Shown: positions 903 through 34,475 of the stretch, piece after piece | Numbering within the stretch: position 1 is the first letter of the stretch | Layout: every line of letters begins with the position of its first letter | Virus record (IMG/VR): IMGVR_UViG_3300005056_000001 | Location: 186,001-250,000 of that record | Reading direction: 5' to 3' (one strand) | DNA: 64,000 nucleotides | The notes under the pieces: model-generated | What the model was told of the DNA's origin: nothing | Seen by the model: only the letters and a program-made list of their open reading frames with translations | Databases searched by the model: none | Made by a program: the position numbers and the translations under genes

Positions 903-1847
903 ATGGAACAAGAAAAGTTATTAAGACTTATCGAAACAGGACTTGATGTTAATATAGAATTGGCATTACAACTGTCCAAGGCGAACGGTATACCCATCGA
1001 CATGTCCGAATATAGGGAGGCACTGACTTGGTACCACGAACACGACATACATATAGGACACGACTTTCTTGATGTAGGCAACCTCTCTGTCAAAGACCTT
1101 TTAAGAAAAGTGCTATTGGTTAGAAGTATTAATATTCCATTAACCAACACAGACTCGTTGCCCAAGTGTATCCGAAGGTTCAAAAACCTTGTCACGTTGT
1201 CGGCATTCGGCAATGGCCTTGCGGAGTTACCCCAAGAAATTGGAGAGCTCGCAAACTTACAGGTATTATCCCTTGCCGACAACAAGCTGACATCATTGCC
1301 CGACACTATCGGAAGGTTAAGTGCTCTTAAATACCTAGACATAGACAACAATAATATTTCGGTACTACCTAGCACTATGAGAAATCTTGATGGTCTACTA
1401 GGAATCCGACTACTCGACAACGATTTTGAGCGGTTTCCTGACGTTCTCTGTGGGCTCAGAAACCTCCGTGAACTAAAAATGGGTCGCAATAAGATTGGGT
1501 CGATTCCAACAAAAATTGGGTTACTGACAAACCTCACAAGCCTTGACGTGTCTAATAATTGTATAAAAGAATTACCAAAGGAATTGTTTAACCTTGACAA
1601 ACTCAAGGTTTTGTCAGTATTTAACAATGAAATAAAAGAGCTCCCAAAAGAAATAGGAAGCCTTGAGTGTCTAGAAAAATTGTACCTGAGCAACAATCCA
1701 ATCGAATGTGTGCCAACAACGATAACCAATCTGACCAATCTTGACGAGTTTATTCTTCTTGGGTCAAACATGAACAAAGTAAGGCAGGCGCAAACAAGCG
1801 AATTACTATTGACGTTACCACATAAACCCGAATTCATAGTCTCCTAG
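903..1847 (+). CDS. leucine-rich repeat protein (LRR-1)
   Basis: Repeated 23-aa LPxxIGxLxxLxxLxLxxNxL units; N-terminal KLLRLIETG..NIELALQL cap; start placed at ATG 903. Confidence 0.93.
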   Translation: MEQEKLLRLIETGLDVNIELALQLSKANGIPIDMSEYREALTWYHEHDIHIGHDFLDVGNLSVKDLLRKVLLVRSINIPLTNTDSLPKCIRRFKNLVTLSAFGNGLAELPQEIGELANLQVLSLADNKLTSLPDTIGRLSALKYLDIDNNNISVLPSTMRNLDGLLGIRLLDNDFERFPDVLCGLRNLRELKMGRNKIGSIPTKIGLLTNLTSLDVSNNCIKELPKELFNLDKLKVLSVFNNEIKELPKEIGSLECLEKLYLSNNPIECVPTTITNLTNLDEFILLGSNMNKVRQAQTSELLLTLPHKPEFIVS

Positions 1848-1854
1848 AAATATC

Positions 1855-2775
1855 ATGACAACAGAAACTAAAATACACATTACGATTACCGATCTATTTA
1901 CTTCTGCAATAGAAAGTAATATCATATCGGGCTATAAATTAATGGCAGCAAATGACACCGAAATCGACCTGTCTGATTATAGGGAAATTTATAATTGGCT
2001 ACAAAAATACGGAAAGGTTGGTGGTACCAATGACACGCTTGAGATGTTATTGGAATTAAACAAGGTAACATCCCTACATTTTATGAATTTGGGGATTAAA
2101 AAGATTCCCGAATCCATTGGTTGTTTAAGGAACCTAAGATATTTATACCTGAGCAACAATACTATTAGAACCTTGCCGACAGGACTTTTTGGACTAAACC
2201 TTGAGCATCTATGGCTCGACGAGAACATAATATCAATTGTTCCTGACGGGATTGGTAGATGTTCCACACTTAGGTCTTTGTGGCTAAACAACAACAAGCT
2301 ATATACACTTCCTGTCGATTTTTCCATGTTAAAAAACCTAGAACACCTAGAGTTGTTTCGTAACAATTTTTCTAAAATTCCCGACTGTATTGGTGGCCTA
2401 GTCCAATTGAAAATATTGAACATGTGGAATAATAATATACAATTTTTGACGGGCGAGGTGTTTAGGTGTAAAAATCTGATTCTTCTTGATGTGTCAAGAA
2501 ATAATATTCGTTGTGTCGGCAATGGGATTTCCAACCTAACAAACTTGGAAAGGCTCCATATGTCAGAAAACAGGCTAAAGAGTATGTTGCCAATAACACA
2601 GGCCAATCTGCCCAACCTAAAGAGTATACTTCTTGAAACCAATAATATAACAAAACCCCCAACGGATTATTCTAGGTTGAAATCTCTTAGACTGCTAAGT
2701 TTGTACGACAACGAATTTACGACCAAGGAAGGAGAATGTATAAAAGAAGCATTAAAAGGACAAAAGTCACAGTAG
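1855..2775 (+). CDS. leucine-rich repeat protein (LRR-2)
   Basis: Tandem LRR units, e.g. IPESIGCLRNLRYLYLSNNTI. Confidence 0.93.
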   Translation: MTTETKIHITITDLFTSAIESNIISGYKLMAANDTEIDLSDYREIYNWLQKYGKVGGTNDTLEMLLELNKVTSLHFMNLGIKKIPESIGCLRNLRYLYLSNNTIRTLPTGLFGLNLEHLWLDENIISIVPDGIGRCSTLRSLWLNNNKLYTLPVDFSMLKNLEHLELFRNNFSKIPDCIGGLVQLKILNMWNNNIQFLTGEVFRCKNLILLDVSRNNIRCVGNGISNLTNLERLHMSENRLKSMLPITQANLPNLKSILLETNNITKPPTDYSRLKSLRLLSLYDNEFTTKEGECIKEALKGQKSQ

Positions 2776-2797
2776 TACTTAACACACCAAATGAACT

Positions 2798-3385
2798 ATG
2801 TATATAAAAAGAATAGTCAAGAAAATAAAGGAACACATCGAAAAGCACAACATAAGGATCTCGACATTCGAGGAATTGTCGGATGTTATTGGACAGGTTT
2901 CGGATATTGATTGTGGGTCAACCATGGATCTTCTCAAAGAATTAGGATTGGGTATGTCGGGCGAACTGTCCCCCAAGGGTTCCGATTTTATCATGACCAA
3001 ATACGTGCTTTCGGGTTCCGAAATATGTATTGTGTTTAGTGTGTCCGACAAAAAATTGGCGGACATGAGACCCGAAATCGAGGAATGGCTAAAGCAGAAG
3101 TATCCCGACAGATTCAGTGGCTTATTGATTTATGATGAGTTGGTATACAAGGGTATCACATCGGATTCATTTTCCCAACGCTTTGGTGTGACAATGGTTT
3201 TAGGCGGCCTTATCCAAGGAGACGCCATTGAGCCGTACAGGCCCGCATTGGATATCCTGACATATTGCAACGGGTTTTATATAAACAACACCCAATACAT
3301 TAAAACCTGTGACAGATTTACCAAGGGATATGTCCTAGACTACCTAAGAGACAAGGACGATTGGAAGTCTTATGCACAATTATAA
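2798..3385 (+). CDS. hypothetical protein
   Basis: 195-aa ORF in a co-directional run. Confidence 0.65.
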   Translation: MYIKRIVKKIKEHIEKHNIRISTFEELSDVIGQVSDIDCGSTMDLLKELGLGMSGELSPKGSDFIMTKYVLSGSEICIVFSVSDKKLADMRPEIEEWLKQKYPDRFSGLLIYDELVYKGITSDSFSQRFGVTMVLGGLIQGDAIEPYRPALDILTYCNGFYINNTQYIKTCDRFTKGYVLDYLRDKDDWKSYAQL

Positions 3386-3405
3386 CCAAAAAACAATTAT
3401 AAAAC

Positions 3406-3840
3406 ATGGGTACACAGGACAAGGATTACAGGGTATTGTTAAAAAAATATGAAGACCTTCAGGTTGAGTATGATGTCTTGGAGCAAGATTTTAAGTCTGC
3501 CAATGCATATGCAACCGAATGCAAAGAGGAGTTGGAGGAATCAGAGGAAAACAAAGACTCTGTGGATAAGCTAGAAAATCGGGTCGAGGATCAGAGGCTT
3601 AAAATAGAGTCTCTAGAGCGTGAGTGTGAGACAAAGTGTGACAAAATTGACGATCTGACTTGTAAACAATCAGAATTGGAGGGCGAAAAATTACATCAGG
3701 AATGGTTTGGACTTGACGACAGGTTTATTTTGTCGTCCGAAAAGGACGAAATAATCTTGTTGCTCGGAGAAGTTTCGATGGTATCGAATGGTCGAGTCAT
3801 TATAGACACACTGACCACGCTGTTGGGCAAATCACAATAG
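3406..3840 (+). CDS. coiled-coil hypothetical protein
   Basis: E/K-rich heptad pattern in the N-terminal two thirds. Confidence 0.7.
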   Translation: MGTQDKDYRVLLKKYEDLQVEYDVLEQDFKSANAYATECKEELEESEENKDSVDKLENRVEDQRLKIESLERECETKCDKIDDLTCKQSELEGEKLHQEWFGLDDRFILSSEKDEIILLLGEVSMVSNGRVIIDTLTTLLGKSQ

Positions 3841-3879
3841 TACATATCTTACTATATAATTAATAAATAATCCAATAGA

Positions 3880-4998
3880 ATGAGACGAGTAGCAGACAAT
3901 TTAAACAGAGACGATAAATATATTGATGTTGTGGTTGGTACCGAGGTGGTATGCCAAAAATACGAAACAGCCGCAAAAATTGTTGGCAAAGAATTTATGC
4001 CCAAGGTCGGACACTACGAGTACGAATTGATGTGGGAAGACGGTACAAACGCATTTGAGTTCGGGGACGTTCTTTCTTTGGCAGAGGACAAAAAATTCCT
4101 CAACGAGGCCGCCATAAGCAAGGAGGATGCCGTTGCCATTAAAAAGATGAAGGATTTCTACAAACTGACCAAGCTAGTAATCAAGCCGTTCAAGGAACTA
4201 AAAGATCAAGACAGAAACAAGGTATTGGCATCCTTTTCGGATTCTAACACCGAAATCCTTAATGTTTCGGCATTTGCATATCACATCACCTTTGTCGGAA
4301 AAGACAAAACCGAACACCAATTTTTTATTGACTTTGAGGAGCCGCTTTCTGATGCTGCCATGTTTATAACATCCTCATTCGACAGTCTGTTTGACATGTT
4401 TGCAGAAGAAGAATATGACAAGTTTTGCAAGATTCCGAACGATATTACTGTCAAGAACAAAATGATCTACACATCAGACGACTTTACAGGAACCACTTTT
4501 GTTGGGAGCTACAATGATTTATACACATACATCATTTCAACCCTTGAGGCCGACAAATATAAAATGTTGTCGTCGTTTGTGAAAGAGTTTGACTTGGGGA
4601 AGACCGAAAATGGCTATGTCAATCAGACTGCCCTAGACGGTGTAATCAAAAAAGACACCATGTCTTACTTCGATGACATGTGGGGAAAGGACGGTGTAGA
4701 ATTTATGAAAGGGAATTTCAACACTGATTATAACGAGTTGCTTGCGCTTTCCGACAAGGTTAATTTAAACAAATACAAAGACCTATACCTAGCAAAATAC
4801 TTGGCACGTCCCAAGAATCCTGTATTCTATGAAATAATGATGGAGGGTGATTTGGAAGGCGAGGTATACAAGGACATTATCGAGTACAAACATTGGATCA
4901 ACGAGAATCTATATGTGGCATGTGAGTTTATCCTTGGCAGCGAACCAATAAAAAACCTAAATGGTAAAATTTATACAGTCCCGTATATGGGAGCCTAG
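3880..4998 (+). CDS. hypothetical protein, probably late (possible virion protein)
   Basis: 372-aa acidic ORF; GTACATA motif at 3840-3846; MRRVAD N-terminus. Confidence 0.7.
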   Translation: MRRVADNLNRDDKYIDVVVGTEVVCQKYETAAKIVGKEFMPKVGHYEYELMWEDGTNAFEFGDVLSLAEDKKFLNEAAISKEDAVAIKKMKDFYKLTKLVIKPFKELKDQDRNKVLASFSDSNTEILNVSAFAYHITFVGKDKTEHQFFIDFEEPLSDAAMFITSSFDSLFDMFAEEEYDKFCKIPNDITVKNKMIYTSDDFTGTTFVGSYNDLYTYIISTLEADKYKMLSSFVKEFDLGKTENGYVNQTALDGVIKKDTMSYFDDMWGKDGVEFMKGNFNTDYNELLALSDKVNLNKYKDLYLAKYLARPKNPVFYEIMMEGDLEGEVYKDIIEYKHWINENLYVACEFILGSEPIKNLNGKIYTVPYMGA

Positions 4999-5021
4999 TT
5001 GGTCAAGACATAATATATTTT

Positions 5022-5058
5022 CAAAAGGGATGCAAAATTATTTTTGCATCCCTTTTGT
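5022..5058 (+). terminator. intrinsic terminator
   Basis: CAAAAAGGGATGCAAAA / TTTTGCATCCCTTTTTG perfect inverted repeat. Confidence 0.75.
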
Positions 5059-5102
5059 TTTTATAAATATTTATTGTACATTGGGTGCTTAACAAGAAGG
5101 AT

Positions 5103-5366
5103 ATGAGACATAAAAACACCGACGCAACAATACCAAAGATTTTTGACGGATTTGTGCAATTAAAGACCGACACGATTCTTGGGGGTCTAAACAAAAGCAA
5201 ACCAATATACAAGAAATTTATGTCTTGGCAAAACGGTTTTATGTATTTGTTGAGATACACCTTTGTTGGTGGTTGGGCAATCAACAAAGATGTCAGGGAC
5301 AGAGAATTGATAAAACCTGTTGATTATGATAATTACATCAAGATCGACCAAGTTGTAACACGATAA
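5103..5366 (+). CDS. hypothetical protein
   Basis: Short ORF abutting LRR-3. Confidence 0.6.
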   Translation: MRHKNTDATIPKIFDGFVQLKTDTILGGLNKSKPIYKKFMSWQNGFMYLLRYTFVGGWAINKDVRDRELIKPVDYDNYIKIDQVVTR

Positions 5367-5368
5367 AC

Positions 5369-6343
5369 ATGAAAACACAACAGAAGCTTCTACGACTCCT
5401 CAGAACAGGAGATACCGACAATATTGAATTGGCATATCAGTTGGCAAAGTCTAGCAATACCAAAATCGACCTGACCGAATTTCGGGCCATGCATAAAATG
5501 TTGTTCAAGTACAGTACTCTAACGTATCAGACACTTTCATGTGAGGAGGAAAAGAAAATGATCTATGAATTGTTTAATCTAAAAACGATAACCTTAGTAA
5601 AGGACTATGTGGAACACGACAGTCTTTGTCATTTACAAAATGTTACTAGCATAACAATGAACGGATTGTGTCTGACCAAGGTTCCTGAATGGATTTATTC
5701 ACTAAATAACCTAGAATATCTATCACTTTCCACCAATATAATTCCTGTATTTCCCAAGCGTTTGTGTGGGATGACAAAACTAAAACATCTTGGTTTTTAT
5801 AATAGCAGAGTCGAAACTATTCCTGACGAGATTGGGAACCTGACCGAGTTAGTATACTTAAATCTGAGTGGTGGTTACCTAAAGGAACTCCCTGAATCAA
5901 TCGGAAATCTAACAAATCTTAAAACATTGGGTGTCGGATTCAACCAAATAACACACCTTCACGAATCAATCGGAAATCTTACAGAAATATGTTACTTACA
6001 TATTAATAACAATAATATTAAACACCTCCCCGAATCAATTGGAAGCCTGACAGATATTATTCATTTTGACATGTCAGCCAACGAGATCGAGTTGTTCCCC
6101 CAATCCATCGGGAACCTAAAAAACTTGTCACTTCTGATAGCCTACAAGAACAAAATCGAAATATTGCCCGACACAATGGGAAGTTTAGAGCAAGTTGAAA
6201 TGTTAAGACTAGACAGCAACCAAATAAACACAGTGTCCGAGTCCATAGGCAACCTACAAAACCTGTATAAAATAGAACTCAGAAACAACCCAATAAACAA
6301 AACTTCTGTACCAATCTCGTTCAGACACAAAATAACCAAATAA
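5369..6343 (+). CDS. leucine-rich repeat protein (LRR-3)
   Basis: LPESIGNLTNLKTL-type units; N-cap KLLRLLRTG..NIELAYQL matches LRR-1. Confidence 0.94.
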   Translation: MKTQQKLLRLLRTGDTDNIELAYQLAKSSNTKIDLTEFRAMHKMLFKYSTLTYQTLSCEEEKKMIYELFNLKTITLVKDYVEHDSLCHLQNVTSITMNGLCLTKVPEWIYSLNNLEYLSLSTNIIPVFPKRLCGMTKLKHLGFYNSRVETIPDEIGNLTELVYLNLSGGYLKELPESIGNLTNLKTLGVGFNQITHLHESIGNLTEICYLHINNNNIKHLPESIGSLTDIIHFDMSANEIELFPQSIGNLKNLSLLIAYKNKIEILPDTMGSLEQVEMLRLDSNQINTVSESIGNLQNLYKIELRNNPINKTSVPISFRHKITK

Positions 6344-9047: not shown

Positions 9048-9182
9048 CTTTTTAGATTTTTTTAGATTTTTAGATGTTGACTTACTTAATATAAGTACAT
9101 TTATTGACAATAACGAAATAATGTACCCAATTCGTTCAATTTAATACAACATTAACATTTATTTTATGGTTTATGTACAAAA

Positions 9183-10152: not shown

Positions 10153-10154
<2 letters not shown>
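9183..10154 (-). CDS. P63C domain protein
   Basis: CYVLSDGRRVLS, GILAVIDEATGYQ, LLPWQKRFPD and PGVVGKWTN motifs. Confidence 0.88.
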
Positions 10155-10191
<37 letters not shown>

Positions 10192-10276
10192 ACAATTTTT
10201 GCCCAGTCGCAAGTAGTTGATTAATATTAGTTTATGTGCATTTGATCATTATCTATATATATAGATATTGCCCAAC

Positions 10277-18131: not shown

Positions 18132-19598
18132 TTAAGGAGTTGCTATACTGTCCCATTTTTCTGTGGAAATATTCCATTTATAATATTGGCCGTTGTATTC
18201 GCCGATTAAGTTGGCCGTGTCGATCATGGTTGGCAAAAATGTTCTTGATGACACGATTGCATTGACCGTCACGTCACCTGTGGCATTGGCAAGGGCATTG
18301 TTTACCGTGGCAAATAGACTGAATAACTCTTCGTTTGTTATTCGAATGTCGTTGGTGCCTGCCTGCCATGACTTGAGCCTTTGAATATCGTCTGCCATGG
18401 ATGATATCTCATCAATCCTGTTTTGGAGCTCCTGATAGTTTCCTATGGCACTTGTTAGGTTTACAATGGTTTCTTGTAGGGCTCTCCAATCTCTTTCTAT
18501 GGTGTTAACCTTGTCTAGTGTCAGATTTAACTTGTCGGCAACATCTAGCCATTGATTGAATGCAAAATCGGTTGTGGTTGTGGTGCTAATATTAAAGGTT
18601 CCTGCACTAAATCCTATGTTCATTTTGAAATTGAACGAATTCCCTGACTGAACATTGTCGGGTTGGTATTTTGTAAGGGTTGGTATTGTTGATACACCAC
18701 CAATGGCAGTGTTAAAGTTTTCGATTAGATGTAGACCCCATGCATTGATCCTGTTTGTGTTGTTACCCGACTTGTCTGTGGCCGTGTAGTACAGGATTAT
18801 TGCATTAAATTCGAAGTCGCCTTGTTTATGATTGGCAGTGTCTTCTAACACAAAATCAAAGTCAATTCCTAGGTCTGTTAGGTCATTCCCGACTTCATAT
18901 TCGTTTCCTCCTGTGTCGTAGATTGCCTCTACCTGTTCGCTGCCCGCAAATGAGTCCAAGCCATTGGAATATTGTCCGCCGCCGCCCTGTGGTATTAAAC
19001 CGCTCGAATGTGTGTTGTGTGGCTTGGGTATAAACTGTACATCGGTCATTAGACCGTCCTCGGTTGGTATGTGCAAATATACCTCTACATATTCATTGCC
19101 GTCGTTGTCCTTTCGGTGATTTACTAGGTTTGTTTCTCCTACATACTTGACCACCTGTTCATAGTTTGGTTGTGCCACGTCTTCTTTGTAAAGGCTGTGT
19201 GTGTTGCCGTCAATCACGGTGGATCCGTCCACAACAAAGTCTATGGCGTCCAACCTGCGCAACATCTTGAAGAGTGCCTGTTCTGCATAGGTTCCTAGCC
19301 CGTTATCCGTTTTCTCGAAATCGCTATTGGACAAACAATTCTCTAAATAGTTCTGAATAACCTTTGGGAATACAATATTCGGGTCGGTTATGGCAGGAAC
19401 GAAAAAACTCCCATCAAAAAAAGTTGATTGGTCTGTTGTGTCTTCCCAATCAGGAATTTTAATCAGGGCAAAGTGGCTTGGTACAATTGTTACGTCACTA
19501 TTCGACAGCAAATATGCAAAATCGTTTGTGGTTGTTGCAAACGTTTGGAGCGTTCCGCCTTTTGATCGCAACTCGTCTAATAAAGGAGTATTTCTCAT
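18132..19598 (-). CDS. probable virion structural protein
   Basis: 488 aa, beta-rich with a C-terminal coiled coil; in a GTACATA-preceded unit. Confidence 0.6.
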   Translation of the reverse strand: MRNTPLLDELRSKGGTLQTFATTTNDFAYLLSNSDVTIVPSHFALIKIPDWEDTTDQSTFFDGSFFVPAITDPNIVFPKVIQNYLENCLSNSDFEKTDNGLGTYAEQALFKMLRRLDAIDFVVDGSTVIDGNTHSLYKEDVAQPNYEQVVKYVGETNLVNHRKDNDGNEYVEVYLHIPTEDGLMTDVQFIPKPHNTHSSGLIPQGGGGQYSNGLDSFAGSEQVEAIYDTGGNEYEVGNDLTDLGIDFDFVLEDTANHKQGDFEFNAIILYYTATDKSGNNTNRINAWGLHLIENFNTAIGGVSTIPTLTKYQPDNVQSGNSFNFKMNIGFSAGTFNISTTTTTDFAFNQWLDVADKLNLTLDKVNTIERDWRALQETIVNLTSAIGNYQELQNRIDEISSMADDIQRLKSWQAGTNDIRITNEELFSLFATVNNALANATGDVTVNAIVSSRTFLPTMIDTANLIGEYNGQYYKWNISTEKWDSIATP

Positions 19599-22536: not shown

Positions 22537-22944
22537 ATGACCCAATTTAATCAACAACTAGGAGAGGCAGACTACAATATGTATGCACCCGACGAATATG
22601 GCTATGCAAATGGTATCATAATCAAGCAGGGGTATGCATTGTTTATCCAAGAAATTCAGTTGTTGTTTGACACAGAAAGGGGTGAAATCCTTGGCAATGA
22701 TTTTGGTTCGGAGGCAAGAAGGCTTATTTGGAGACAAAGAGCAACCGAGCAACAGGTTACCGCCTTGCTTATTGCCGAAATAAAAAGATTCTGTGACCTG
22801 TCAAATAAATACCGCTTTAAACTGAGTGTTAAGTTTATGTTGGGGGACTCAAGAGACATTGCCGTGATTGATATAGAGGTGGAAGCCTTGGAGGAGGCCG
22901 TGGAATACGGCGGAATTGTTGCCTATCAGTATACTTTTTCTTAG
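22537..22944 (+). CDS. baseplate wedge protein, T4 gp25-like
   Basis: LLFDTERGEILG.DFG motif; GTACATA at 22517-22523. Confidence 0.75.
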   Translation: MTQFNQQLGEADYNMYAPDEYGYANGIIIKQGYALFIQEIQLLFDTERGEILGNDFGSEARRLIWRQRATEQQVTALLIAEIKRFCDLSNKYRFKLSVKFMLGDSRDIAVIDIEVEALEEAVEYGGIVAYQYTFS

Positions 22945-26318: not shown

Positions 26319-26357
26319 AAAAAACCGATTGTTTCGTAATGGAACAATCGGTTTTTG
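26319..26357. terminator. bidirectional terminator
   Basis: AAAAACCGATTGTT / AACAATCGGTTTTT between convergent genes. Confidence 0.8.
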
Positions 26358-26361: not shown

Positions 26362-26907
26362 CTACAGATAATTATTGCTGATTATGTATGCCAATGTCGG
26401 GTCTTTTTCGCCAAGCTCCGTGAATCTTGGTGTCTTCTTATACATGTTAGGATAGATTTCGGAATTGTCGTATGCCTCCCTTTCCCATGGCAACTCTTTG
26501 TGCTTCTCGAAGTCTCGGTTTGATTTGTAGTCCTCAAGGGTAATGTAATCATTGCCGTCCCATGTAAACCATGTCATGTCGCTATTGACGCCCAACTTTA
26601 CATTTACGATCTGCCAAATGTGGGTCATTTCATGGGTGATAATCTTTAGAATGGGCATGGTTCCAAACTTGCTGTCGATGTTTATTTTAACATCTTTTTT
26701 CTTGTCGTCTAGCAAGTCTTTCATGTCTATATTACCAAATATATGTTTCGGCATTTTTCGATAATTCAAAAGAATATTCTTTTGGATATTTTGCAGATCT
26801 AAAATTTCAAGGAGCCATTCGGTGTAGTCCACGAATAGTATCTTTTCGTATTCGGACATTCCTCCCTTGGTCTTTACCTTTATCTTTGACTCGGTTATCC
26901 TTCTCAT
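26362..26907 (-). CDS. HExxH zinc-metallopeptidase-like protein with MRRITE leader
   Basis: THEMTHIWQ...LPWEREAY. Confidence 0.75.
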   Translation of the reverse strand: MRRITESKIKVKTKGGMSEYEKILFVDYTEWLLEILDLQNIQKNILLNYRKMPKHIFGNIDMKDLLDDKKKDVKINIDSKFGTMPILKIITHEMTHIWQIVNVKLGVNSDMTWFTWDGNDYITLEDYKSNRDFEKHKELPWEREAYDNSEIYPNMYKKTPRFTELGEKDPTLAYIISNNYL

Positions 26908-27845
26908 ATTGTTGGGTATTGAATGATTGTTAATGAAGTCATTTCCTTGGTGAAATCAAGGGTTCCTAGGTCTATTTTGGTGCCACTAATATTTAACCTC
27001 CTGAGCATTTCCATTTTTCGCATCGTACTTGGGAGGTCTGCAATGGGCGAACCCTGAATATCCAACTCCTCCAACTTCTTTAGCTTGCCAATAGACTTGG
27101 GGAGTTCGGCTATATTGTTGTGATTGAGCCAAAGTTTTTTGAGTCTTCGTAGGTCTCCAATTGTCTTGGGGACGTCCTTGATATTGTTGTAACCCAAGCC
27201 CAACAGCCTTAATTTTTTAAGGCTTCCGATACTTGGCGGCAACGACTTTAGATTGTTGTTTATCATAAAAAACTCCTCCAAGTTAACTAGCATGCCAATT
27301 CCTGTCGGGATATTATTAATCGAATTTTTGTTGATATAGAGCTCCTTTAGGGAGGTTAGGCCGCCAACATAACGACTCAGTGATGTTAGCCTGTTTTTGT
27401 TCAAAATAAGCACCTCAAGATTTGCAAGTTTTCGGATCGTTGTTGGTAGTGTGGCCAATGAATTATTCTGAAGCTCCAAGGACTTTAGATTTGTTAGATC
27501 ACCAATAGAACTTGGCAACTCCTTGAGTCCACAACCCGTGACGGTTAGCGTGCGCAACATTTTCAACAGCCCCAATTGGTCGGGGAGTCTGTCAATCTTG
27601 GTGTCTCTAATAACAATGTGCTCGTCTAAAAACAGCCCTTTAAGGTCGTGTTTTAAGATTTTTAGCATAGGGGCGAACTCGACCTTTAATTCTGCCTCTA
27701 TACCCAAAGAAAGCTCTGTGTCAAGCCTGAATGCCGATATAATGTTGAGCCGTTCGCCTGTCTTGATTAGGTTATACGCATTCTTGCGTTCTTTATTACG
27801 CTTTTTTTCATCCTCGGGGTTTGTTGCCTCTGTTATTCTACGCAT
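26904..27845 (-). CDS. leucine-rich repeat protein (LRR-4) with MRRITE leader
   Basis: LPSSIGDLTNLKSLELQNNSL-type repeats. Confidence 0.93.
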   Translation of the reverse strand: MRRITEATNPEDEKKRNKERKNAYNLIKTGERLNIISAFRLDTELSLGIEAELKVEFAPMLKILKHDLKGLFLDEHIVIRDTKIDRLPDQLGLLKMLRTLTVTGCGLKELPSSIGDLTNLKSLELQNNSLATLPTTIRKLANLEVLILNKNRLTSLSRYVGGLTSLKELYINKNSINNIPTGIGMLVNLEEFFMINNNLKSLPPSIGSLKKLRLLGLGYNNIKDVPKTIGDLRRLKKLWLNHNNIAELPKSIGKLKKLEELDIQGSPIADLPSTMRKMEMLRRLNISGTKIDLGTLDFTKEMTSLTIIQYPTI

Positions 27846-27864
27846 AATTGTTTTTTTGTATGTA

Positions 27865-28569
27865 TCATATAACCGTTATCCCTCGCATATCGTTCCTAAA
27901 GAATTTGCCTACCTTTACAGGGTGTTCCCAAGGATTATCCTTGATAGACAATACGCCAAGACCCTGTAACTTGACAAGGTCGTTTGGGAGGTTTGTTATT
28001 TGATTGTTGCCGAGTCTTAGTGTCTCAAGATTGGTCATATCGCCAATATATGACGGGATCTTGGTCAAGTGATTATAGCCCATATCCAAGGATTTTAGAC
28101 TATCCATCTTTGACAATACCTTTGGAATGATTTTAAAGTCATTCTCGTCAAGATATAATGTGCGGAGCCTTGTCAGGTTTTCGATTGTTTTTGGAAGACT
28201 TGACAATTTATTTTGTGACAGTCCTAGGAAATCCAAATTTTCCAAGTCGCCTATTTCCTTTGGGAGTTCGAAAATGCCGTTGGCTTCCAATTGAAGTTCT
28301 CTTAGGTTTGTCAACATTCCAATTTCTTTTGGGACTGTGCCGATTCCGTCGCCTGTTAGGTCAATACTGTCTGCCATAAACAAACCAAGCAGGTCTGTCT
28401 CCATTGAAGTAAGGAAATATGAAAATATATCCTCTAGCTCTGCAATGTACCCAAGCCCTACCGACTCATCAAATGCGATTGCTGTTTCTATGCTGTCTTG
28501 ATCACCCGACAATAATTGTGCCTTAACAAAATTAATATTGTCGGACTTACTTTCTACTATACGTTTCAT
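27865..28569 (-). CDS. leucine-rich repeat protein (LRR-5) with MKRIVE leader
   Basis: LPKEIGDLENLDFLGLSQNKL-type repeats. Confidence 0.93.
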   Translation of the reverse strand: MKRIVESKSDNINFVKAQLLSGDQDSIETAIAFDESVGLGYIAELEDIFSYFLTSMETDLLGLFMADSIDLTGDGIGTVPKEIGMLTNLRELQLEANGIFELPKEIGDLENLDFLGLSQNKLSSLPKTIENLTRLRTLYLDENDFKIIPKVLSKMDSLKSLDMGYNHLTKIPSYIGDMTNLETLRLGNNQITNLPNDLVKLQGLGVLSIKDNPWEHPVKVGKFFRNDMRGITVI

Positions 28570-28571: not shown

Positions 28572-30248
28572 TTATAATTGTTCAAACACTCCATTCTTTT
28601 GGGCAAATACCATAACAGAATCGTTCAGTGTTGTTAGTGTGTTGTTGTTAAAAAGTGCAATAGGTCTCAATATAGGAATTTCTCCGTTATTAACCGCAAT
28701 ACTATTCAAAGAATTTAGACCAAGGTTAGGATTCTTTCCGACAGGAACCTCTTTTCGGACACGTTGTACAATACGGGATGTTCCGCTAGAGGTTACCTCG
28801 TTCACGAAATAGTACCCGTTCGATTTTGCCAACTCGTTGTCTTCCGAAAATATGTTGACCTGCACGGATTTAATTTCGTTCATGTTGTAGATCCCGTTTT
28901 CGATATCCGAATTCACAATAATATTATCAAACTTCATGTCCCTGCTTTTGAATGTTGCCTTTAACATCAATTCGGATACAATGTCTCGGATCTCGTTTAG
29001 TACTTGGGCGTCATCATCAAAATCACCCCTGACATAGATTAGCATGGAATACCTTTTTAACACAGGATTTTCCATTATAATTTCGGATGTCGGAAATTGT
29101 CTCTTGGAGTTGTTAATCATACTTTTGATGGCATCCTTTTGGGGCAATGTCAGGGAAAACCTAGTCTCGGACATATTCAAGTAATCACGGCTGTTCAAAA
29201 AGTTTAGACTCGGCAATGCCAACACATGCATGATTAGATCATTGTTCTTGTCTGACCAAACAGACACATGAGACAATATACTAAGACGGCTAAGATATGC
29301 CTGTAGGTTTTCGGGTCTAACAAACGTGAATGCCCTTGACGAATGTCCGATTAAGTTTCGGGTTACCTCGGGATGTTCTCCGTTTGAGGCCAAAATTAGT
29401 CCTGTGGAGCGTGTGATTATAAAGTCTGTGAGCTCGTCACCGTTCGAGTTGGTGAATCCTTCCACGATTGTAAATTTATCCCCACGACTCAATATTCCCA
29501 ACTCGCCATTGGTGACCATATATTCGACCTCGACAACATCGCCGTGTTTTAATTCAACCCCGTGTGTGGTGTCGCCAAAAATAATATCCAACTGACTTTG
29601 CCATCCATTCTCCGTAATGTACACCTCGTCGCCTTGTGCCATGTCCTCAATACTGTCTGTTTTTGACCACAGGACATTGTTTACCTTTACCTTGACAGAA
29701 TAATGTTCGATATATTCCTCGTCTTCCAATCGGATTGTAAATAGTGTGGTGTCTTCGCTCGTGGCATCAATCACAAAAGATTGATTTTTTAGAATCCCTT
29801 GTATTATTGGCAGCTCAATGGTGTTGTTACTGAGCGAGTATTTCTTTTCGGTGTCGATGTTTACGGTATAAACAAGACTGTTTGTTGTGCAAGTAAGCGT
29901 GGCGGTCGGAGAAACATACAAAAAACTACCAACTGCAAACGACTCGTTCTTTCGGAGCTTCACGGTACCACGGGCCGAAATTGGTCGTGTTGCCTCGTGT
30001 CCTGATATCGAGGCCAAGCCCCTTATTGAGGTCGGCTTTGTGACGGTCTGTGGTGCCAATTGTCTATGTGACTGTGCTTGGTATAACAAGGACAGGTTTA
30101 GCTGATCCTGAAGCACATCAAGAACGATTTTATAAAGCCTTGCCTGTGCAGAATCACGCATCCCCAATGTCTTGGCAATAAACTCATTTACCTGAGTTCT
30201 CATGCGATTCATTCTGATCGAAGATTGGTCGAAGATTTTTAGTGCCAT
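28572..30248 (-). CDS. baseplate wedge protein, T4 gp6-like
   Basis: SIRGLASISGHEATR, IIQG, IIFGD...G and VEVEY.VTNG motifs; GTACATA at 30262-30268. Confidence 0.8.
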   Translation of the reverse strand: MALKIFDQSSIRMNRMRTQVNEFIAKTLGMRDSAQARLYKIVLDVLQDQLNLSLLYQAQSHRQLAPQTVTKPTSIRGLASISGHEATRPISARGTVKLRKNESFAVGSFLYVSPTATLTCTTNSLVYTVNIDTEKKYSLSNNTIELPIIQGILKNQSFVIDATSEDTTLFTIRLEDEEYIEHYSVKVKVNNVLWSKTDSIEDMAQGDEVYITENGWQSQLDIIFGDTTHGVELKHGDVVEVEYMVTNGELGILSRGDKFTIVEGFTNSNGDELTDFIITRSTGLILASNGEHPEVTRNLIGHSSRAFTFVRPENLQAYLSRLSILSHVSVWSDKNNDLIMHVLALPSLNFLNSRDYLNMSETRFSLTLPQKDAIKSMINNSKRQFPTSEIIMENPVLKRYSMLIYVRGDFDDDAQVLNEIRDIVSELMLKATFKSRDMKFDNIIVNSDIENGIYNMNEIKSVQVNIFSEDNELAKSNGYYFVNEVTSSGTSRIVQRVRKEVPVGKNPNLGLNSLNSIAVNNGEIPILRPIALFNNNTLTTLNDSVMVFAQKNGVFEQL

Positions 30249-30669
30249 TGTATTTTTATTATATGTACTGTTTTTTTTGAAAAAACGGAAAATGTATGAA
30301 TTATTGGCGTTTTAATACAAAAAAGTGCCATTTGCTACCCCAATAAAAAACGTCAAAAAGCCTAATAACAGCTATGGTGGTCTAGCCCTGTGTTTGTCGA
30401 ATGTTCAGGAAAATAAAAAAGCCCATATTTCCCAAGAAAAAACACCCACTTTTGCAAAAAATGGCGAAATCGTCCTCTTTTTGCCCTAAAAATTAGACTT
30501 TTTCGATATTCGAGGCCTATTTTTTCATTTGAGTTTTTTGGGTTAAATTTATTACCACTCTGTAACCCTTTATATATCGAATGTATGCGATTTTTTATAA
30601 TGTGAATATTTTGGCTGTCTACTAGTAAAACAATAATAACTTTAATTTAATAACAAAATCAACAAAAAC

Positions 30670-31515
30670 ATGTACAAAATAATCAGTATTTTGATGTTAT
30701 TTTCAACAACCTGTCTTGGACAAATCAAGATAGGAACTTTCAATATTCAAGTATTTGGTGCCAAGAAAAGCTCTAATATAACTGTGCTTGATAGTATCTG
30801 TTCAGTGATATCCCGATACGATATATTGGCAATACAAGAAGTAAAGGATATTAGCGGAAAAACAATCACAATACTTAGACATGCCCTCAATGAAAATGGA
30901 CTTGGCAACCATGCAATAATGAGCAGTCCACGTTCGGGACTCCAAGAAAGTGATGTGCATTATAGGGAGCAATACCTATACATATACGACACCACCACAA
31001 TCAATGTCGTGGAGGTGGTCGATTGCGAACACTCAGACAAAACACTTCAATGGGGACTAATGTCGGACACGGCATCCGAAATAAAAAGAGAGCCGTTCAT
31101 AGGACTATTCAAGGTAAAGAAGACAGGATTGTTGCTCACACTCTTTAATATACACACAAGCCCGTCTGTGGCAAACGAGGATGTCACTGCCATGCTAAAA
31201 AATATATCAATCATTTGCGACCAAGGCAGATCCCCACATTTTAAGAACTTTATTGTCTTGGGCGACTTTAATGCAAGTTGCTCCTACATGTCTAAAACCG
31301 AAATAGAAAAACTCAAAAAGGAATTCCCGTTCTTGATATGGGTTATTGACAATGATAGCGACAGCTCTGTATCAAGCAAAGATTGTGCATATGACCGAAT
31401 ATTAATATCGGCCCACCTGTCTAATCTTGTTATTGATCATGGGGTGGACAAACGCTCTGTGACAAAAAGCGTGTCTGATCACTATCCTGTTTTTATGATT
31501 TTGGAAGAAAATTAG
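30670..31515 (+). CDS. DNase I-like endonuclease (EEP superfamily) with signal peptide
   Basis: FNIQVFG, YDILAIQEV, EQYLYIY, REPF, GDFNASCSY, CAYDRI and SDHYPV motifs. Confidence 0.9.
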   Translation: MYKIISILMLFSTTCLGQIKIGTFNIQVFGAKKSSNITVLDSICSVISRYDILAIQEVKDISGKTITILRHALNENGLGNHAIMSSPRSGLQESDVHYREQYLYIYDTTTINVVEVVDCEHSDKTLQWGLMSDTASEIKREPFIGLFKVKKTGLLLTLFNIHTSPSVANEDVTAMLKNISIICDQGRSPHFKNFIVLGDFNASCSYMSKTEIEKLKKEFPFLIWVIDNDSDSSVSSKDCAYDRILISAHLSNLVIDHGVDKRSVTKSVSDHYPVFMILEEN

Positions 31516-32561: not shown

Positions 32562-34475
32562 TTATTTATTCTTCCCTTCGGCCTCCATTTCTTTAATCGC
32601 CTGCACAATGGCGGGTGTATAAAATTGGAGCAAATTTTGACTTAAATCTTTTGCATGATATCGACCATCAATCTGTCGTGTCCAAATCGTTTTTAGGGCA
32701 CCGTCTTTTGATCCGTCGTAAACATTCCTATTGAATGATATCCTGTGACCCGCCTTAAATGCGGCCTCTAGCTCCTTGTCGTTGCAGTTTACACCAAGCA
32801 GAATTTCTTTTGAGCAGCCAAGTGCCTTTCCTGAATTGGGATATTGGGCCTTCATGTCCAAGAACACACCAAATAGAATTTTGTGTAGCCTTGGAGGAAC
32901 CACATAACCACCCTCAAATGGTTTTATTTTTTTTGATGGTGCCTGTATGGACTTGTAGAACCTTCGCTTTTCGCCTATTACATTGCTTGTGTAATAATAT
33001 CCGACCTTGGTGGTCACATTTCTTTTTCGACCCATTAACATGGCATCCTCGTCGTTGTTGTCTTCGATATCCTCTTCTTCGTCCTCTTCTTTTCCGTATC
33101 CATCAAACGACGAGGCCGTCACCAATCCTTGTTCGTTCCAAAAGTAATCATGAAACACGGCAGCCGATTTTCGGGTGATATAGAATGCATCAGACACAGA
33201 CACTTTCGAGCTGTAACTAGATATTAGAATTTGATTCAGAAACAGTTTAGAGAGATGTATCAACATCAATGTGATTGTGTCAATACTGCCATAGAAAAAG
33301 AATGTCTCGGTGTCTCCTGTAATTAAATCTTGAAATTTCCCGTCAAAGGAAACCTTTCCGACCCCCAAAAACTCCTTGGAAATAACGTCCAATTTGAGGG
33401 ACTTCGAGTCTCTTTTCCTAGAAAACTTCTCGGTGATTACCATATAGTCCAACTCTAGTCGATGGGCAGGCTTAAAGTTTAGTGGTTTATCCGATCCAAA
33501 CTTGGCAACCATGGCATCAGACAGAATAGCCGTAGAACGTACAACACTTTCTGTCGGACTTGCCATGGCCCTAAGATGTTTTCTTTTGGGTATCGACTTG
33601 ATACGACCTGTCTTGTATATCGAACTTTGTTGTTTTGATGGGTGTAGTACTTTATAGGCAAGGCTGTTTGTGTTTGAGGTCTCGTTCATTTCCCATTCTA
33701 GTTTGATTGCCCTGTTGTGCAGATACAAACTATCAAAGGTCTCGTTGTTCCACCAAATCGTGCTGTGTAATGCCTTTGCCTGTCCCTTAAAAAATCCTGC
33801 CAATAACCTGTACTCGGTCGGGAACCAATATATTCTTATTTGTGGAGGGTTTTCTAGACTGAGCCCCAAGTCCTTTAGCACAGAAAACCTAAGCTTCTTG
33901 GCCTTTATATCATCTTCTTTGTCCTTGGGAAGTTCTTTTTCGGGAATCTTAAGTAGCGGGTCATTGATATCAGAGAATAGATGTGCCCCAATTCTTGCCT
34001 CGATCTTCTTGTGTAGTTTTTCTTCTGCTCCTACTCTCCAATTCTCGTCTTTTTCGACACTCCTGTATTCGTCTTCTAGGGCATATACCACAGTATCAAG
34101 ATTGGACGATGTTATTGTTATTAAATTAACGGGTGCCTCTGAATCTGCTGCTTCAGGGAATGGCGCAGTTATTTTGGTAATGTCAACCTCGATATCACAT
34201 GCAAAAACATTAGGAATATTGTATGCAAATATTAAGTCCTGTTCTTTTTGTGTAAGCGTGAAAAGAAACTGCCTTAGTTCATACTGTCCAAACTTTGACA
34301 CATTATCCGTAATCTTTATGGCCTTTTCGCCATCCCATGTATCCACATCACCATTCACATCTTTTTTATACTTCCAAAACTTAACATCCTTTTTTTCAAG
34401 AATGCTGATTTGACCGTCGGTATCAATATAAGAAATATCAACCCGATTGAGTCCTTGGATTACGTTTACAATCAT
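32562..34475 (-). CDS. family B DNA polymerase, N-terminal subunit (3'-5' exonuclease plus palm motif A)
   Basis: ExoI CDIE, ExoII WN..TFD..YL, ExoIII Y..ID, FEGGYV and motif A DMKAQYP; no motif B or DTD motif C. Confidence 0.8.
   Translation of the reverse strand: MIVNVIQGLNRVDISYIDTDGQISILEKKDVKFWKYKKDVNGDVDTWDGEKAIKITDNVSKFGQYELRQFLFTLTQKEQDLIFAYNIPNVFACDIEVDITKITAPFPEAADSEAPVNLITITSSNLDTVVYALEDEYRSVEKDENWRVGAEEKLHKKIEARIGAHLFSDINDPLLKIPEKELPKDKEDDIKAKKLRFSVLKDLGLSLENPPQIRIYWFPTEYRLLAGFFKGQAKALHSTIWWNNETFDSLYLHNRAIKLEWEMNETSNTNSLAYKVLHPSKQQSSIYKTGRIKSIPKRKHLRAMASPTESVVRSTAILSDAMVAKFGSDKPLNFKPAHRLELDYMVITEKFSRKRDSKSLKLDVISKEFLGVGKVSFDGKFQDLITGDTETFFFYGSIDTITLMLIHLSKLFLNQILISSYSSKVSVSDAFYITRKSAAVFHDYFWNEQGLVTASSFDGYGKEEDEEEDIEDNNDEDAMLMGRKRNVTTKVGYYYTSNVIGEKRRFYKSIQAPSKKIKPFEGGYVVPPRLHKILFGVFLDMKAQYPNSGKALGCSKEILLGVNCNDKELEAAFKAGHRISFNRNVYDGSKDGALKTIWTRQIDGRYHAKDLSQNLLQFYTPAIVQAIKEMEAEGKNK

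What the first reader, a model, noticed from the sequence alone, without database searches (positions are those of the whole stretch)
26362..28569. Candidate system: LRR proteins with a capsid-targeting-like leader (virion-packaged LRR effectors)
Seen: three consecutive genes right behind the gp6-like baseplate gene begin MKRIVE-S (LRR-5), MRRITE-A (LRR-4) and MRRITE-S (an unrelated HExxH protein). The leader is therefore shared across two unrelated folds. The three LRRs among early-type genes (903, 1855, 5369) lack it. Other GTACATA-preceded genes have similar N-termini (36461 MNNRLTE-A..YVE-S..INE-S; 52569 ..NLNE-A; 3880 MRRVAD). Established: T4 internal proteins carry a short N-terminal capsid-targeting sequence that the gp21 prohead protease removes after (L/I)xE, and they are injected with the DNA (IPI* blocks the GmrSD nuclease). 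Inference: this phage loads LRR binding proteins and a metallopeptidase-like protein into its head, so they can act before any phage gene expression, plausibly against host defences. I am not aware of a described LRR-based injected-effector system.
Basis: partly seen in the sequence, partly recalled or inferred. Interest (0 to 1): 0.85.

Follow-up and report, generated by a model that had tools for sequence, protein, structure and literature searches.

The report
Head-targeting leader on phage LRR proteins
Three neighbouring late genes of an uncultured 368-kb jumbo phage (two leucine-rich-repeat proteins and a small zinc-protease-like protein) carry the same six-residue N-terminal tag, which matches the phage's own capsid-protease cutting site and the tag T4 uses on its injected Alt enzyme. 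They are therefore probably loaded into the phage head and delivered with the DNA, a known mechanism carrying a new kind of cargo.

Summary
Window genes 28569-27865 (LRR-5, MKRIVE|S), 27845-26904 (LRR-4, MRRITE|A) and 26907-26362 (HExxH protein, MRRITE|S) follow the gp6-like baseplate wedge gene in one late operon. This start motif occurs nowhere else in the window.

Walking along the contig reached the head module: T4-type portal, a Peptidase_S77 (gp21-family) protease fused to scaffold, and the major capsid protein. The predicted capsid maturation site is LITE|S, the same I-T-E|S as the leader. T4 Alt, an injected enzyme, begins MELITE and loses exactly six residues at ITE-6.

The HExxH protein belongs to a phage family of 127 homologues. 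Of these, 65% carry a hydrophobic-x-Glu leader, against 24% in the background. In three other phages this leader is phage-specific and shared with unrelated neighbours. One contig has MRRITE on the HExxH protein and MRRISE on a pentapeptide-repeat protein and on an unknown protein. PAU-clade phages widely show such shared leaders.

Verdict: a T4-type capsid-targeting and prohead-protease tag carrying new cargo (LRR solenoids and a SprT-like zincin). Packaging, cleavage, ejection and any anti-defence role are inferred, not shown. It is a new variant of a known kind.

The parts
30262..30268 (-). GTACATA late-promoter-like motif about 20 nt upstream of the wedge gene. It is the presumed promoter of the wedge, LRR-5, LRR-4 and HExxH operon.
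   Evidence: The same heptamer lies upstream of the capsid, protease-scaffold, gp2-like, gp13 neck, wedge and gp25-like genes. It is absent upstream of the three upstream LRR genes.
28572..30248 (-). Baseplate wedge subunit (gp6-like), first gene of the operon. It has no leader (starts MALKIF).
   Evidence: PHROG 219 baseplate wedge, E 6e-18. 37% identity to the pT24 and PTm1 wedge proteins.
27865..28569 (-). LRR-5, 234 aa. Leader MKRIVE|S (codons 28552-28569), then a roughly 60-aa helical cap and about 6 LRRs. Acidic, pI 4.6.
   Evidence: Pfam LRR_14 1.6e-23, LRR_4, LRR_8. Alignment with paralogues. pI.
27859..27866 (-). GATACATA, a one-mismatch variant of the late motif, 13 nt upstream of the LRR-4 start codon.
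26904..27845 (-). LRR-4, 313 aa. Leader MRRITE|A (codons 27828-27845), a charged linker, a helical cap and about 9 LRRs. Basic, pI 9.7.
   Evidence: Pfam LRR_14 8e-37. Atlas model pTM 0.85, SHOC2-like LRR, with structural matches starting at residue 14 or later. The orthologue in a 71%-identical relative starts MRNYLRKISE|ES.
26362..26907 (-). HExxH protein, 181 aa. Leader MRRITE|S (codons 26890-26907). HEMTH is at residues 92-96 (26620-26634). Family-invariant residues are H92, E93, H96, Q99 and E142. Predicted SprT-like / minimal zincin fold.
   Evidence: 127 homologues. Invariant columns. AF2 with alignment gives pLDDT 94.7, with residues 1-10 a low-confidence tail. BFVD matches to the pT24 protein (TM 0.75) and to 'SprT-like' phage proteins. 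Weak Pfam hits of family members to DUF6782, eCIS_core and SprT-like.
26319..26356 (-). Intrinsic terminator (hairpin plus U-run) that closes the operon just after the HExxH stop codon.
   Evidence: RNA fold -16.8 kcal/mol, z-score -5.5, 0 of 200 shuffles as good.
903..6343 (+). Three LRR paralogues (903-1847, 1855-2775, 5369-6343) in a block of plus-strand genes; none of the three has the late motif upstream. All lack the leader and the N-terminal extension. They serve as an internal control.

Best explanation
The six residues M-(R/K)-R-I-(T/V)-E are this phage's version of the T4 capsid-targeting and prohead-protease propeptide.

Proposed sequence of events:
1. The wedge, LRR-5, LRR-4 and HExxH genes are transcribed late as one unit. 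This is inferred from the GTACATA motif and the terminator.
2. The tag brings the three proteins into the scaffolding core of the prohead (inferred).
3. The gp21-family (Peptidase_S77) protease, which is fused to the scaffold in this phage, removes the tag after Glu6. It is predicted to cut the major capsid protein after LITE73 in the same way (inferred from motif identity and from T4 Alt).
4. The mature proteins stay in the DNA-filled head and enter the next host with the DNA, as T4 Alt and the internal proteins (IPs) do (by analogy).
5. In the cell the two enzyme-less LRR solenoids would act as stoichiometric binders of host proteins. The SprT-like zincin would act as a protease. Both would act before any phage gene is expressed (speculative, target unknown).

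Shown here: the genes, the folds, the shared peptide, its rarity, the protease and capsid site in the same genome, and recurrence of the principle in other phages.

Not shown here: packaging, cleavage, ejection and function.
For: 1. The leader is non-random and conserved at peptide level, not DNA level.
2. It sits on an N-terminal extension that the upstream LRR paralogues lack. None of 120 generic LRR homologues has such a start.
3. The same contig encodes Portal_T4, a gp2-like protein, Peptidase_S77 fused to scaffold (E 3.8e-10, above the Pfam cut-off) and the capsid protein.
4. The capsid propeptide ends ...SILITE|SGYD. This aligns with IINE|S in PTm1, NILE|S in pT24 and LLLE|S in the 67%-identical relative. 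The scaffold part of the protease fusion contains further sites: TITE|N, QITE|G and QLTE|S.
5. T4 Alt reads MELITE|LFD in the T4 genome. PMC5694885 states that six residues are removed at ITE-6. T4 gp23 has FLTE|A.
6. In the HExxH family, 61 of 94 full-length homologues have hydrophobic-x-E within residues 4-14, against 24% of background genes (p = 6e-13). Many look like the T4 CTS, for example MQTFKEYINE|S.
7. Leaders are phage-specific and shared with unrelated genes. L100 has HExxH MRRITE|A, a pentapeptide-repeat protein MRRISE|S (Pfam 1e-56) and a 239-aa unknown MRRISE|I. L105/L106 have MIIFLE|SK and MKIYLE|SK (the second on a DUF5662 protein). L108 has two 14-residue leaders ending INE.
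8. In the clade, PAU has 11 proteins starting MKTL..LYE|, including the annotated scaffold and 'internal capsid protein'. 22 of the MCP-containing loci fetched show the same pattern.
9. All four leader-bearing genes found in 119 kb are in GTACATA-driven late units. The fourth is a 799-aa KD-repeat protein full of [LIV]xE sites, which looks like a core protein.
10. Rao & Black (PMC3012670) describe the T-even internal proteins as diverse proteins that share only the CTS.
Against: - There is no virion proteome, N-terminal sequence or transcript data. The phage is uncultured.
- The leader is shorter (6 aa) than the typical clade leaders (9-14 aa) and than the T4 IP CTS (10 aa). Whether six residues suffice for targeting, rather than only for cleavage, is unknown even for T4 Alt.
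- No small leader-bearing internal proteins lie between portal and capsid gene in this phage, unlike in PAU.
- In the close relative, the LRR leader (KISE|E) and the capsid site (LLLE|S) agree only at the level of the generic motif, so there is no strict co-variation.
- Generic [LIVF]xE in the first 18 residues is common (about 27% of genes).
- The operon position behind a baseplate gene would also fit a tail-associated role.
- Only 119 of 368 kb were examined.
Confidence: 0.62

Rival explanations
1. The leader is a prohead-protease site and the proteins do enter the prohead, but they serve assembly rather than infection. They could be accessory core or scaffold components, or a maturation peptidase, that are degraded or expelled. 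They could also stay in the head without a role in the host. On this reading there is no injected effector system.
For: T4 uses the same chemistry on gp22, gp67 and gp68, which are destroyed (PMC5694885). The fourth leader-bearing gene is a KD-repeat protein riddled with [LIV]xE sites and resembles a core protein. The protease gene is fused to a scaffold-like region.
Against: LRR-4, LRR-5 and the HExxH protein are compact folded domains, with the tag at the extreme N-terminus only. That is the layout of T4 Alt and the IPs. Unlike scaffold proteins, they were not noted to be riddled with internal [LIV]xE sites, but this was not counted. The cassette is absent from pT24 and PTm1 and reduced to one LRR in the close relative. 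Such variability is typical of accessory cargo, not of essential assembly parts. Leader-less paralogues elsewhere in the genome argue for an intracellular function in the host.
Confidence: 0.15
2. LRR-4 and LRR-5 are tail or baseplate accessory proteins (adhesins or host-recognition modules) that are co-expressed with the wedge. On this reading the shared start is unrelated to the head.
For: The genes lie directly behind, and are translationally coupled to, the baseplate wedge gene. LRR/beta-helix domains are proposed host-recognition elements on Goslar virion fibres (bioRxiv 10.64898/2026.04.21.720040).
Against: This does not explain why an unrelated zincin carries the identical tag. It does not explain why that zincin family carries CTS-like leaders in many phages, nor why the tag equals the capsid maturation site. 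There is no fibre, collar or baseplate-attachment domain. The proteins are bare LRR domains of 25-35 kDa, and leader-less paralogues are encoded elsewhere in the genome.
Confidence: 0.1
3. The shared start is a by-product of gene-cassette shuffling or of translation-initiation constraints. A short conserved 5' end would promote recombination or efficient initiation, and the peptide would have no role at protein level.
For: Conserved 5' ends could serve as recombination joints for swapping cargo genes. Two of the three starts are translationally coupled.
Against: The codons differ while the peptide is identical. There is no shared upstream DNA. Across homologues the leader sequence changes completely but keeps hydrophobic-x-Glu at its end and matches other proteins of the same phage. 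In the AF2 model the tag is a flexible tail outside the fold.
Confidence: 0.05

Closest known systems
T4 Alt (head-packaged, injected ADP-ribosyltransferase)
   Same: Six-residue N-terminal propeptide ending I-T-E: MELITE in T4 (ITE-6 per PMC5694885) against MRRITE/MKRIVE here. Both are folded proteins of tens of kDa, expressed late. The protease is of the gp21 / Peptidase_S77 family. In both phages the gene lies next to baseplate or tail genes.
   Different: The cargo here has no ART domain. It consists of enzyme-less LRR solenoids and a small zincin. Packaging and ejection are demonstrated for Alt and only inferred here.
T4 internal proteins IPI, IPII and IPIII with the capsid targeting sequence (CTS)
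   Same: One short leader is shared by otherwise unrelated proteins of the same phage. It is cut after (L/I)-x-E, and the cargo set varies between relatives. IPI* counters a host restriction system (PMC3012670).
   Different: The T4 IP CTS is 10 residues or more, and the IPs are small (about 8-20 kDa) proteins with their own folds. Here the leader is 6 residues and the cargo is repeat-protein binders plus a peptidase-like protein.
Sphingomonas phage PAU gp149-gp154 and the shared leaders of the PAU / pT24 / PTm1 clade
   Same: Same phage clade (wedge 30-37% and capsid 26-33% identical). Multiple proteins per phage start with a phage-specific leader ending in [LIV]xE, including the annotated scaffold and 'internal capsid protein'.
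   Different: The clade leaders are 9-14 residues (MKTLTQLYE, MKSLSTHITE, MKNL.SFDEFVNE) and sit mostly on small proteins next to the protease gene. No LRR cargo was seen in the 80 loci retrieved with the MCP query.
phiKZ / SPN3US ejection proteins processed by the S80 prohead protease
   Same: These are jumbo phages with many head-internal proteins that carry propeptides cleaved after Glu and are ejected into the host (PMC5694885).
   Different: Different protease family and motif (S/A/G-x-E). The propeptides are often longer than 100 residues. The lineage is different, with nucleus-forming relatives.
SprT-like / zincin metallopeptidases of jumbo phages (Iyer et al. 2021, PMC7824862)
   Same: Small HExxH zincin-like proteins, variable in copy number and proposed to cleave host proteins. 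BFVD neighbours of the model are annotated SprT-like.
   Different: That paper describes them as encoded enzymes and does not identify them as leader-tagged head cargo. Our protein is below Pfam thresholds and has no solved homologue.
Bacterial type III secreted LRR effectors (YopM, IpaH, SlrP class)
   Same: The concept is the same: an LRR binding module delivered pre-made into a target cell by an injection machine.
   Different: Unrelated delivery signal and machine. These are bacterial effectors aimed at eukaryotic hosts. The LRR subtype here is SHOC2-like with 23-residue repeats, and there is no E3 ligase domain.

Membership tests
T4-type CTS / prohead-protease-processed head cargo | The phage encodes a gp21-family (Peptidase_S77) prohead protease with a scaffolding core. 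| tested here: met
   L096:15229-17310, 693 aa, Peptidase_S77 E 3.8e-10 (40 bits, cut-off 27). It is flanked by Portal_T4 and the capsid gene.
T4-type CTS / prohead-protease-processed head cargo | Short N-terminal propeptide ending in (L/I/V)-x-Glu. | tested here: met
   MKRIVE|S, MRRITE|A and MRRITE|S. T4 Alt MELITE|L, gp24 ...LLRE|S and gp23 ...FLTE|A were read from the T4 genome.
T4-type CTS / prohead-protease-processed head cargo | The same cleavage motif is used at the capsid-protein maturation site of the same phage. | tested here: met
   The capsid propeptide ends LITE|SGYD, aligned with the equivalent sites of five relatives. The site is predicted, not sequenced.
T4-type CTS / prohead-protease-processed head cargo | The leader is shared by unrelated proteins within a phage and differs between phages. 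| tested here: met
   LRR against zincin folds here. L100, L105/L106, L108 and PAU show the same principle with other leaders.
T4-type CTS / prohead-protease-processed head cargo | Late (morphogenetic) expression. | tested here: inconclusive
   The operon starts at a GTACATA motif that also precedes the capsid, protease, neck and baseplate genes. There is no transcript data.
T4-type CTS / prohead-protease-processed head cargo | The protein is present in purified virions with the propeptide removed. | not testable with these tools
   The phage is uncultured and known from metagenomes only (JGI 3300005056 and 3300029927).
T4-type CTS / prohead-protease-processed head cargo | Ejection into the host with the DNA, and an effect on a host target. 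| not testable with these tools
   No data. Inferred by analogy with Alt and IPI*.
Leucine-rich repeat proteins | Tandem LxxLxLxxN repeats recognised by the Pfam LRR models. | tested here: met
   LRR_14, LRR_8 and LRR_4 well above cut-offs for both proteins. Atlas structure matches at TM 0.76-0.81.
Zincin metallopeptidases (SprT-like / DUF6782 / minigluzincin-like) | HExxH on a helix plus a third zinc ligand, and family membership by profile or fold. | tested here: inconclusive
   HExxH plus invariant Q99 and E142. 20 of 73 family members weakly hit DUF6782 and a few hit SprT-like or eCIS_core. BFVD neighbours are called SprT-like. The window protein itself has no Pfam hit. PDB fold hits are weak, E >= 0.03. 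The profile search of PDB sequences found nothing significant.

The most novel reading that the evidence does not exclude
A widespread clade of PAU-like jumbo phages, whose cultured members infect Tenacibaculum, Sphingomonas and other bacteria, may pre-load their capsids with a fast-evolving set of repeat-protein binders and a DNA-associated SprT-like protease. LRR proteins are the binders here; a pentapeptide-repeat protein, a possible DNA mimic, is seen in a related contig. All are addressed by a short phage-specific tag. On this reading these would be the first LRR-based effectors injected by a virus of bacteria. They would neutralise host immune or nucleoid proteins in the seconds before transcription starts, and leader-less paralogues encoded elsewhere in the genome would be made only after infection.
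Probability: 0.35. Interest if true: 0.8.

Novelty: new variant of a known kind. Interest (0 to 1): 0.62.

Why it matters
If the tag works as in T4, it gives a simple sequence rule for reading the injected protein arsenal directly from metagenomic jumbo-phage genomes. The rule is a phage-specific N-terminal peptide that ends in hydrophobic-x-Glu and matches the capsid maturation site.

It would also add two new cargo classes to a list that so far holds enzymes and small inhibitors. These are enzyme-less solenoid binders (LRR, pentapeptide repeats) and a small zincin. LRR domains are the classic sensor modules of immunity, so a virus injecting them into bacteria would be an unexpected turn in phage-host conflict.

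The short tag could also serve as a packaging handle for engineering relatives such as pT24 or PTm1.

Tried and rejected
- Megablast of the locus against GenBank phages gave no match.
- The word-indexed protein search with the HExxH protein found only itself. The search with the N-terminal 110 residues of LRR-4 found nothing.
- The full-length LRR-4 search returned only generic SHOC2-like LRRs from bacteria, archaea and plants, none with a leader. It says nothing about origin.
- AF2 without an alignment was useless (pLDDT 37).
- The Foldseek search of PDB and the profile search of PDB sequences gave no reliable relative for the zincin.
- An alignment-based scan for the capsid gene returned 80 relatives but not this contig. 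The head module was reached instead by walking with the look-up of encoding contigs.
- LRR and HExxH alignments were too diverse for the search for related loci.
- The scan with the 799-aa protein was swamped by its DKDK repeat.
- The co-variation test between LRR leader and capsid site in the 67-71%-identical relative was not decisive. KISE|E and LLLE|S agree only generically.
- The generic pattern [LIVF]xE in the first 18 residues was rejected as a criterion because about 27% of genes have it.
- A signal peptide or lipoprotein reading was rejected because there is no hydrophobic stretch.
- A sixth LRR gene behind the gp13 neck gene first looked like a late, leader-less counter-example. It is separated from gp13 by two terminator-like hairpins and has no GTACATA motif.
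- The contexts of P0002, P0010 and P0030 were too short to be informative.
Full report
**What is there.** The window is positions 186001-250000 of a 368,109-bp metagenomic contig (JGI 3300005056, Ga0071102_1000001 = IMGVR_UViG_3300005056_000001). By its baseplate wedge, capsid and other proteins it is a jumbo myophage of the clade that holds Sphingomonas phage PAU and Tenacibaculum phages pT24 and PTm1. On the minus strand there are four tightly packed genes:
- a gp6-like baseplate wedge gene (30248-28572; PHROG 219);
- LRR-5 (28569-27865, 234 aa);
- LRR-4 (27845-26904, 313 aa);
- a 181-aa HExxH protein (26907-26362).

LRR-5 starts two bases after the wedge stop codon, and HExxH overlaps LRR-4 by ATGA. 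A strong hairpin with a U-run closes the unit (dG -16.8 kcal/mol, z -5.5). The cassette is missing behind the wedge gene of pT24 and PTm5. In a 71%-identical relative it is reduced to a single LRR gene (L005).

**Is the shared start more than chance?** The three proteins begin MKRIVE|S, MRRITE|A and MRRITE|S. The pattern M[RK][RK][ILV].E at an ORF start occurs only there in the window. In 119 kb of stitched contig (166 genes) it occurs once more. From position-specific residue frequencies, 0.14 such starts are expected (Poisson P for three or more = 4e-4). Given three hits, adjacency has probability 2e-4. The two identical MRRITE peptides are encoded by different codons and the upstream DNA is not shared, so the peptide is what is conserved. 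Aligned with the three LRR paralogues in the upstream plus-strand block (903, 1855, 5369), the tag sits on an N-terminal extension of 13-21 residues that those paralogues lack. The orthologue in the relative has MRNYLRKISE|ES at the same place. None of the 120 best generic LRR homologues has such a start.

**Two unrelated folds.** LRR-4 and LRR-5 are bare SHOC2-like LRR domains (Atlas model pTM 0.85, structural matches beginning after residue 14). A full HMMER scan of 1.84 billion representatives gave the HExxH protein 127 homologues. Their invariant residues are H92, E93, H96, Q99 and E142. With that alignment AlphaFold2 gives pLDDT 94.7 and pTM 0.90, and the first ten residues form a low-confidence tail. 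The model matches the pT24 homologue (TM 0.75) and several phage proteins annotated SprT-like, including proteins from T4-like cyanophages and phiM12-type phages. It has no reliable solved relative. Family members weakly hit DUF6782, eCIS_core, M78 and SprT-like. I call it a SprT-like minimal zincin. Peptidase activity is inferred from the motif only.

**The phage's own head machinery.** The window holds no head genes. I walked rightwards along the contig and found a gp13 neck gene. About 20 kb beyond the window lie a gp2-like gene, Portal_T4, a 693-aa Peptidase_S77 protease fused to a scaffold-like region (confirmed E 3.8e-10) and the 635-aa major capsid protein. The capsid propeptide ends ...SILITE|SGYDSV...GMG. 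In an alignment with five relatives this is the position of IINE|S (PTm1), NILE|S (pT24), ALME|N (PAU) and LLLE|S (the 67% relative). The predicted capsid maturation site is therefore I-T-E|S, the same as the leader. The scaffold part also contains TITE|N, QITE|G and QLTE|S.

**The T4 parallel, checked on sequence.** In the T4 genome Alt begins MELITE|LFD. gp23 has FLTE|A at residue 65, gp24 has LLRE|S at residue 10, and gp67, gp68 and gp22 start with similar sites. Ali et al. 2017 (PMC5694885) state that six residues are removed from Alt by gp21 at ITE-6. They also state that T4 CTS propeptides are 10-20 residues long and direct proteins into the prohead core. Rao & Black 2010 (PMC3012670) describe the T-even internal proteins as a diverse set sharing only the CTS, with IPI* blocking GmrS/GmrD. 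The leader here is thus closest to the Alt propeptide: M-x-x-I-T-E, six residues, on a folded protein.

**The principle recurs.** Three sets of results show this:
- *Clade.* PAU has eleven proteins within 21 kb that start MKT(L/I)..L(Y/F)E|, among them the annotated scaffold and 'internal capsid protein'. 22 of the MCP-containing loci fetched (80 from IMG/VR plus the GenBank PAU locus) show a phage-specific leader shared by two to eleven genes and ending in [LIV]xE. One example is MKSLSTHITE|S on five genes in L013.
- *HExxH family.* 61 of 94 full-length homologues have hydrophobic-x-Glu within residues 4-14, against 24% of background genes (Fisher p = 6e-13). Many read like the T4 CTS (MQTFKEYINE|S, MIRFQEFINE|K, MKRFKTYITE|A).
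- *Sharing with neighbours.* Where context is available, the HExxH leader equals that of unrelated neighbouring genes. In L100 the HExxH protein has MRRITE|A, a pentapeptide-repeat protein has MRRISE|S (Pfam 1e-56) and a 239-aa unknown has MRRISE|I. In L105/L106 the pair is MIIFLE|SK and MKIYLE|SK, the latter on a DUF5662 protein. In L108 (a 421-kb contig) two 14-residue leaders end in INE.

This is what a targeting and cleavage tag predicts. It is hard to explain otherwise.

**Timing.** It lies upstream of the capsid, protease, gp2-like, gp13, wedge and gp25-like genes and of other genes. It is absent before the three upstream LRR genes. The wedge gene has it 20 nt upstream, and LRR-4 has a GATACATA variant. 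All four genes with the strict leader in 119 kb are in such units. The fourth is a 799-aa KD-repeat protein starting MKKVYE|L. It is full of [LIV]xE[GASN] sites and looks like a prohead core component. Late expression is inferred from motif position, not measured.

**Most likely mechanism and its rivals.** I consider it most likely (0.62) that the tag takes LRR-5, LRR-4 and the zincin into the prohead core, that the S77 protease removes it after Glu6, and that the mature proteins travel with the DNA.

What they do in the host is open:
- The LRRs have no catalytic domain, so they would bind something. LRR-4 is basic (pI 9.7) and LRR-5 acidic (pI 4.6).
- SprT-type zincins are typically DNA-associated proteases. 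This rests on general knowledge of that family.
- An anti-defence role rests only on the IPI* analogy.

The rivals are:
- head entry for assembly purposes only (0.15);
- baseplate-associated LRR adhesins (0.10), a reading suggested by the operon position and by the proposal for Goslar fibres;
- a nucleic-acid-level explanation of the shared start (0.05), which the codon differences contradict.

**Limits.**
- The phage is uncultured, so there are no proteomic or transcript data.
- Only 119 of 368 kb were read.
- Six residues is short for a targeting signal, and it may be only a cleavage site.
- The close relative shows no strict co-variation between LRR leader and capsid site.

**Novelty.** The mechanism is known from T4, and shared leaders in the PAU clade are visible in GenBank annotation. 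The new element is the cargo: LRR solenoids, a pentapeptide-repeat protein in a related contig, and a conserved SprT-like zincin family that appears to be habitually tagged. Full-text searches found no description of LRR proteins as phage head or ejection proteins. I rate it a new variant of a known kind.

Noticed in passing
window 37017-41029: The ribonucleotide reductase large subunit is split into two ORFs (37017-37583 and 38588-41029) by an endonuclease gene (37622-38425, PHROG 4645). This looks like an intron or homing-endonuclease insertion. PTm1 also has a split, intein-containing RNR.
   Followed up: partly
window 30670-31515: A plus-strand gene next to the wedge promoter encodes a DNase I-like Exo_endo_phos protein with a hydrophobic N-terminus. 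PHROGs files it with cytolethal distending toxin B-like nucleases (E 2e-6).
   Followed up: no
window and L093-L121 (contig 177855-296856): GTACATA behaves as a late-promoter-like motif. There are 24 forward and 8 reverse copies in 92 kb, lying upstream of the capsid, protease, gp2-like, neck, wedge and gp25-like genes. 23 of 166 genes have it within 80 nt upstream.
   Followed up: partly
L095:6724-7734 (contig about 254.8-255.8 kb): A sixth LRR gene (336 aa, same PHROG 6688) lies behind the gp13 neck gene. It starts MEYTTEE without the leader and is separated from gp13 by two terminator-like hairpins.
   Followed up: partly
L096:3883-6282 (contig 261471-263870): A 799-aa late protein starts MKKVYE|L. 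It has a long DKDKDKDA low-complexity tract and dozens of [LIV]xE[GASN] sites. It is a candidate prohead core or internal protein and has no database family.
   Followed up: partly
L010 / L014 (Sphingomonas phage PAU, 104.9-126.6 kb): Eleven PAU proteins share the start MKT(L/I)..L(Y/F)E, a T4-CTS-like leader. 22 of the fetched loci with related capsid genes show their own version. This looks like a clade-wide, largely undescribed cargo-tagging system.
   Followed up: partly
L100 (JGI 3300045264, Ga0493824_28824, 4973 bp): A pentapeptide-repeat protein (252 aa) carries the leader MRRISE. After the tag it has an N-terminal helix resembling the cap of the window's LRR proteins. It could be a DNA-mimic cargo.
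   Followed up: partly
window 7337-8125 and 48123-48908: Two paralogous predicted lipoproteins lie on opposite strands, 40 kb apart. Both start MKSLKNVF and have a cysteine at about residue 20.
   Followed up: no
L122 (contig 177855-186000, left of the window) and window 8820-11245: Mobile-element and toxin-antitoxin-like genes sit inside the phage genome: OrfB_IS605/TnpB, a TnsA-like gene, an IS1595 transposase, a HicA-like toxin, an RnlB antitoxin-like gene and a cytosine methylase.
   Followed up: no
window 32562-34475 and L096:7512-9020: A family B DNA polymerase appears in at least two separate pieces about 47 kb apart. This recalls the split, intein-containing polymerase of PTm1.
   Followed up: no
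window 18132-19598, 22537-22944, 28572-30248: The three baseplate genes that are adjacent in pT24 (BPT24_245, 244, 243) are here spread over 12 kb. Methylase and other non-structural genes are inserted between them.
   Followed up: partly
L096:13353-15170 and L099:6000-7823: The portal proteins of this phage and of its relative have a [LIV]xE site near residue 18-21 (KNISE|K and DRISE|S). This raises the possibility of N-terminal portal processing, which T4 lacks.
   Followed up: no
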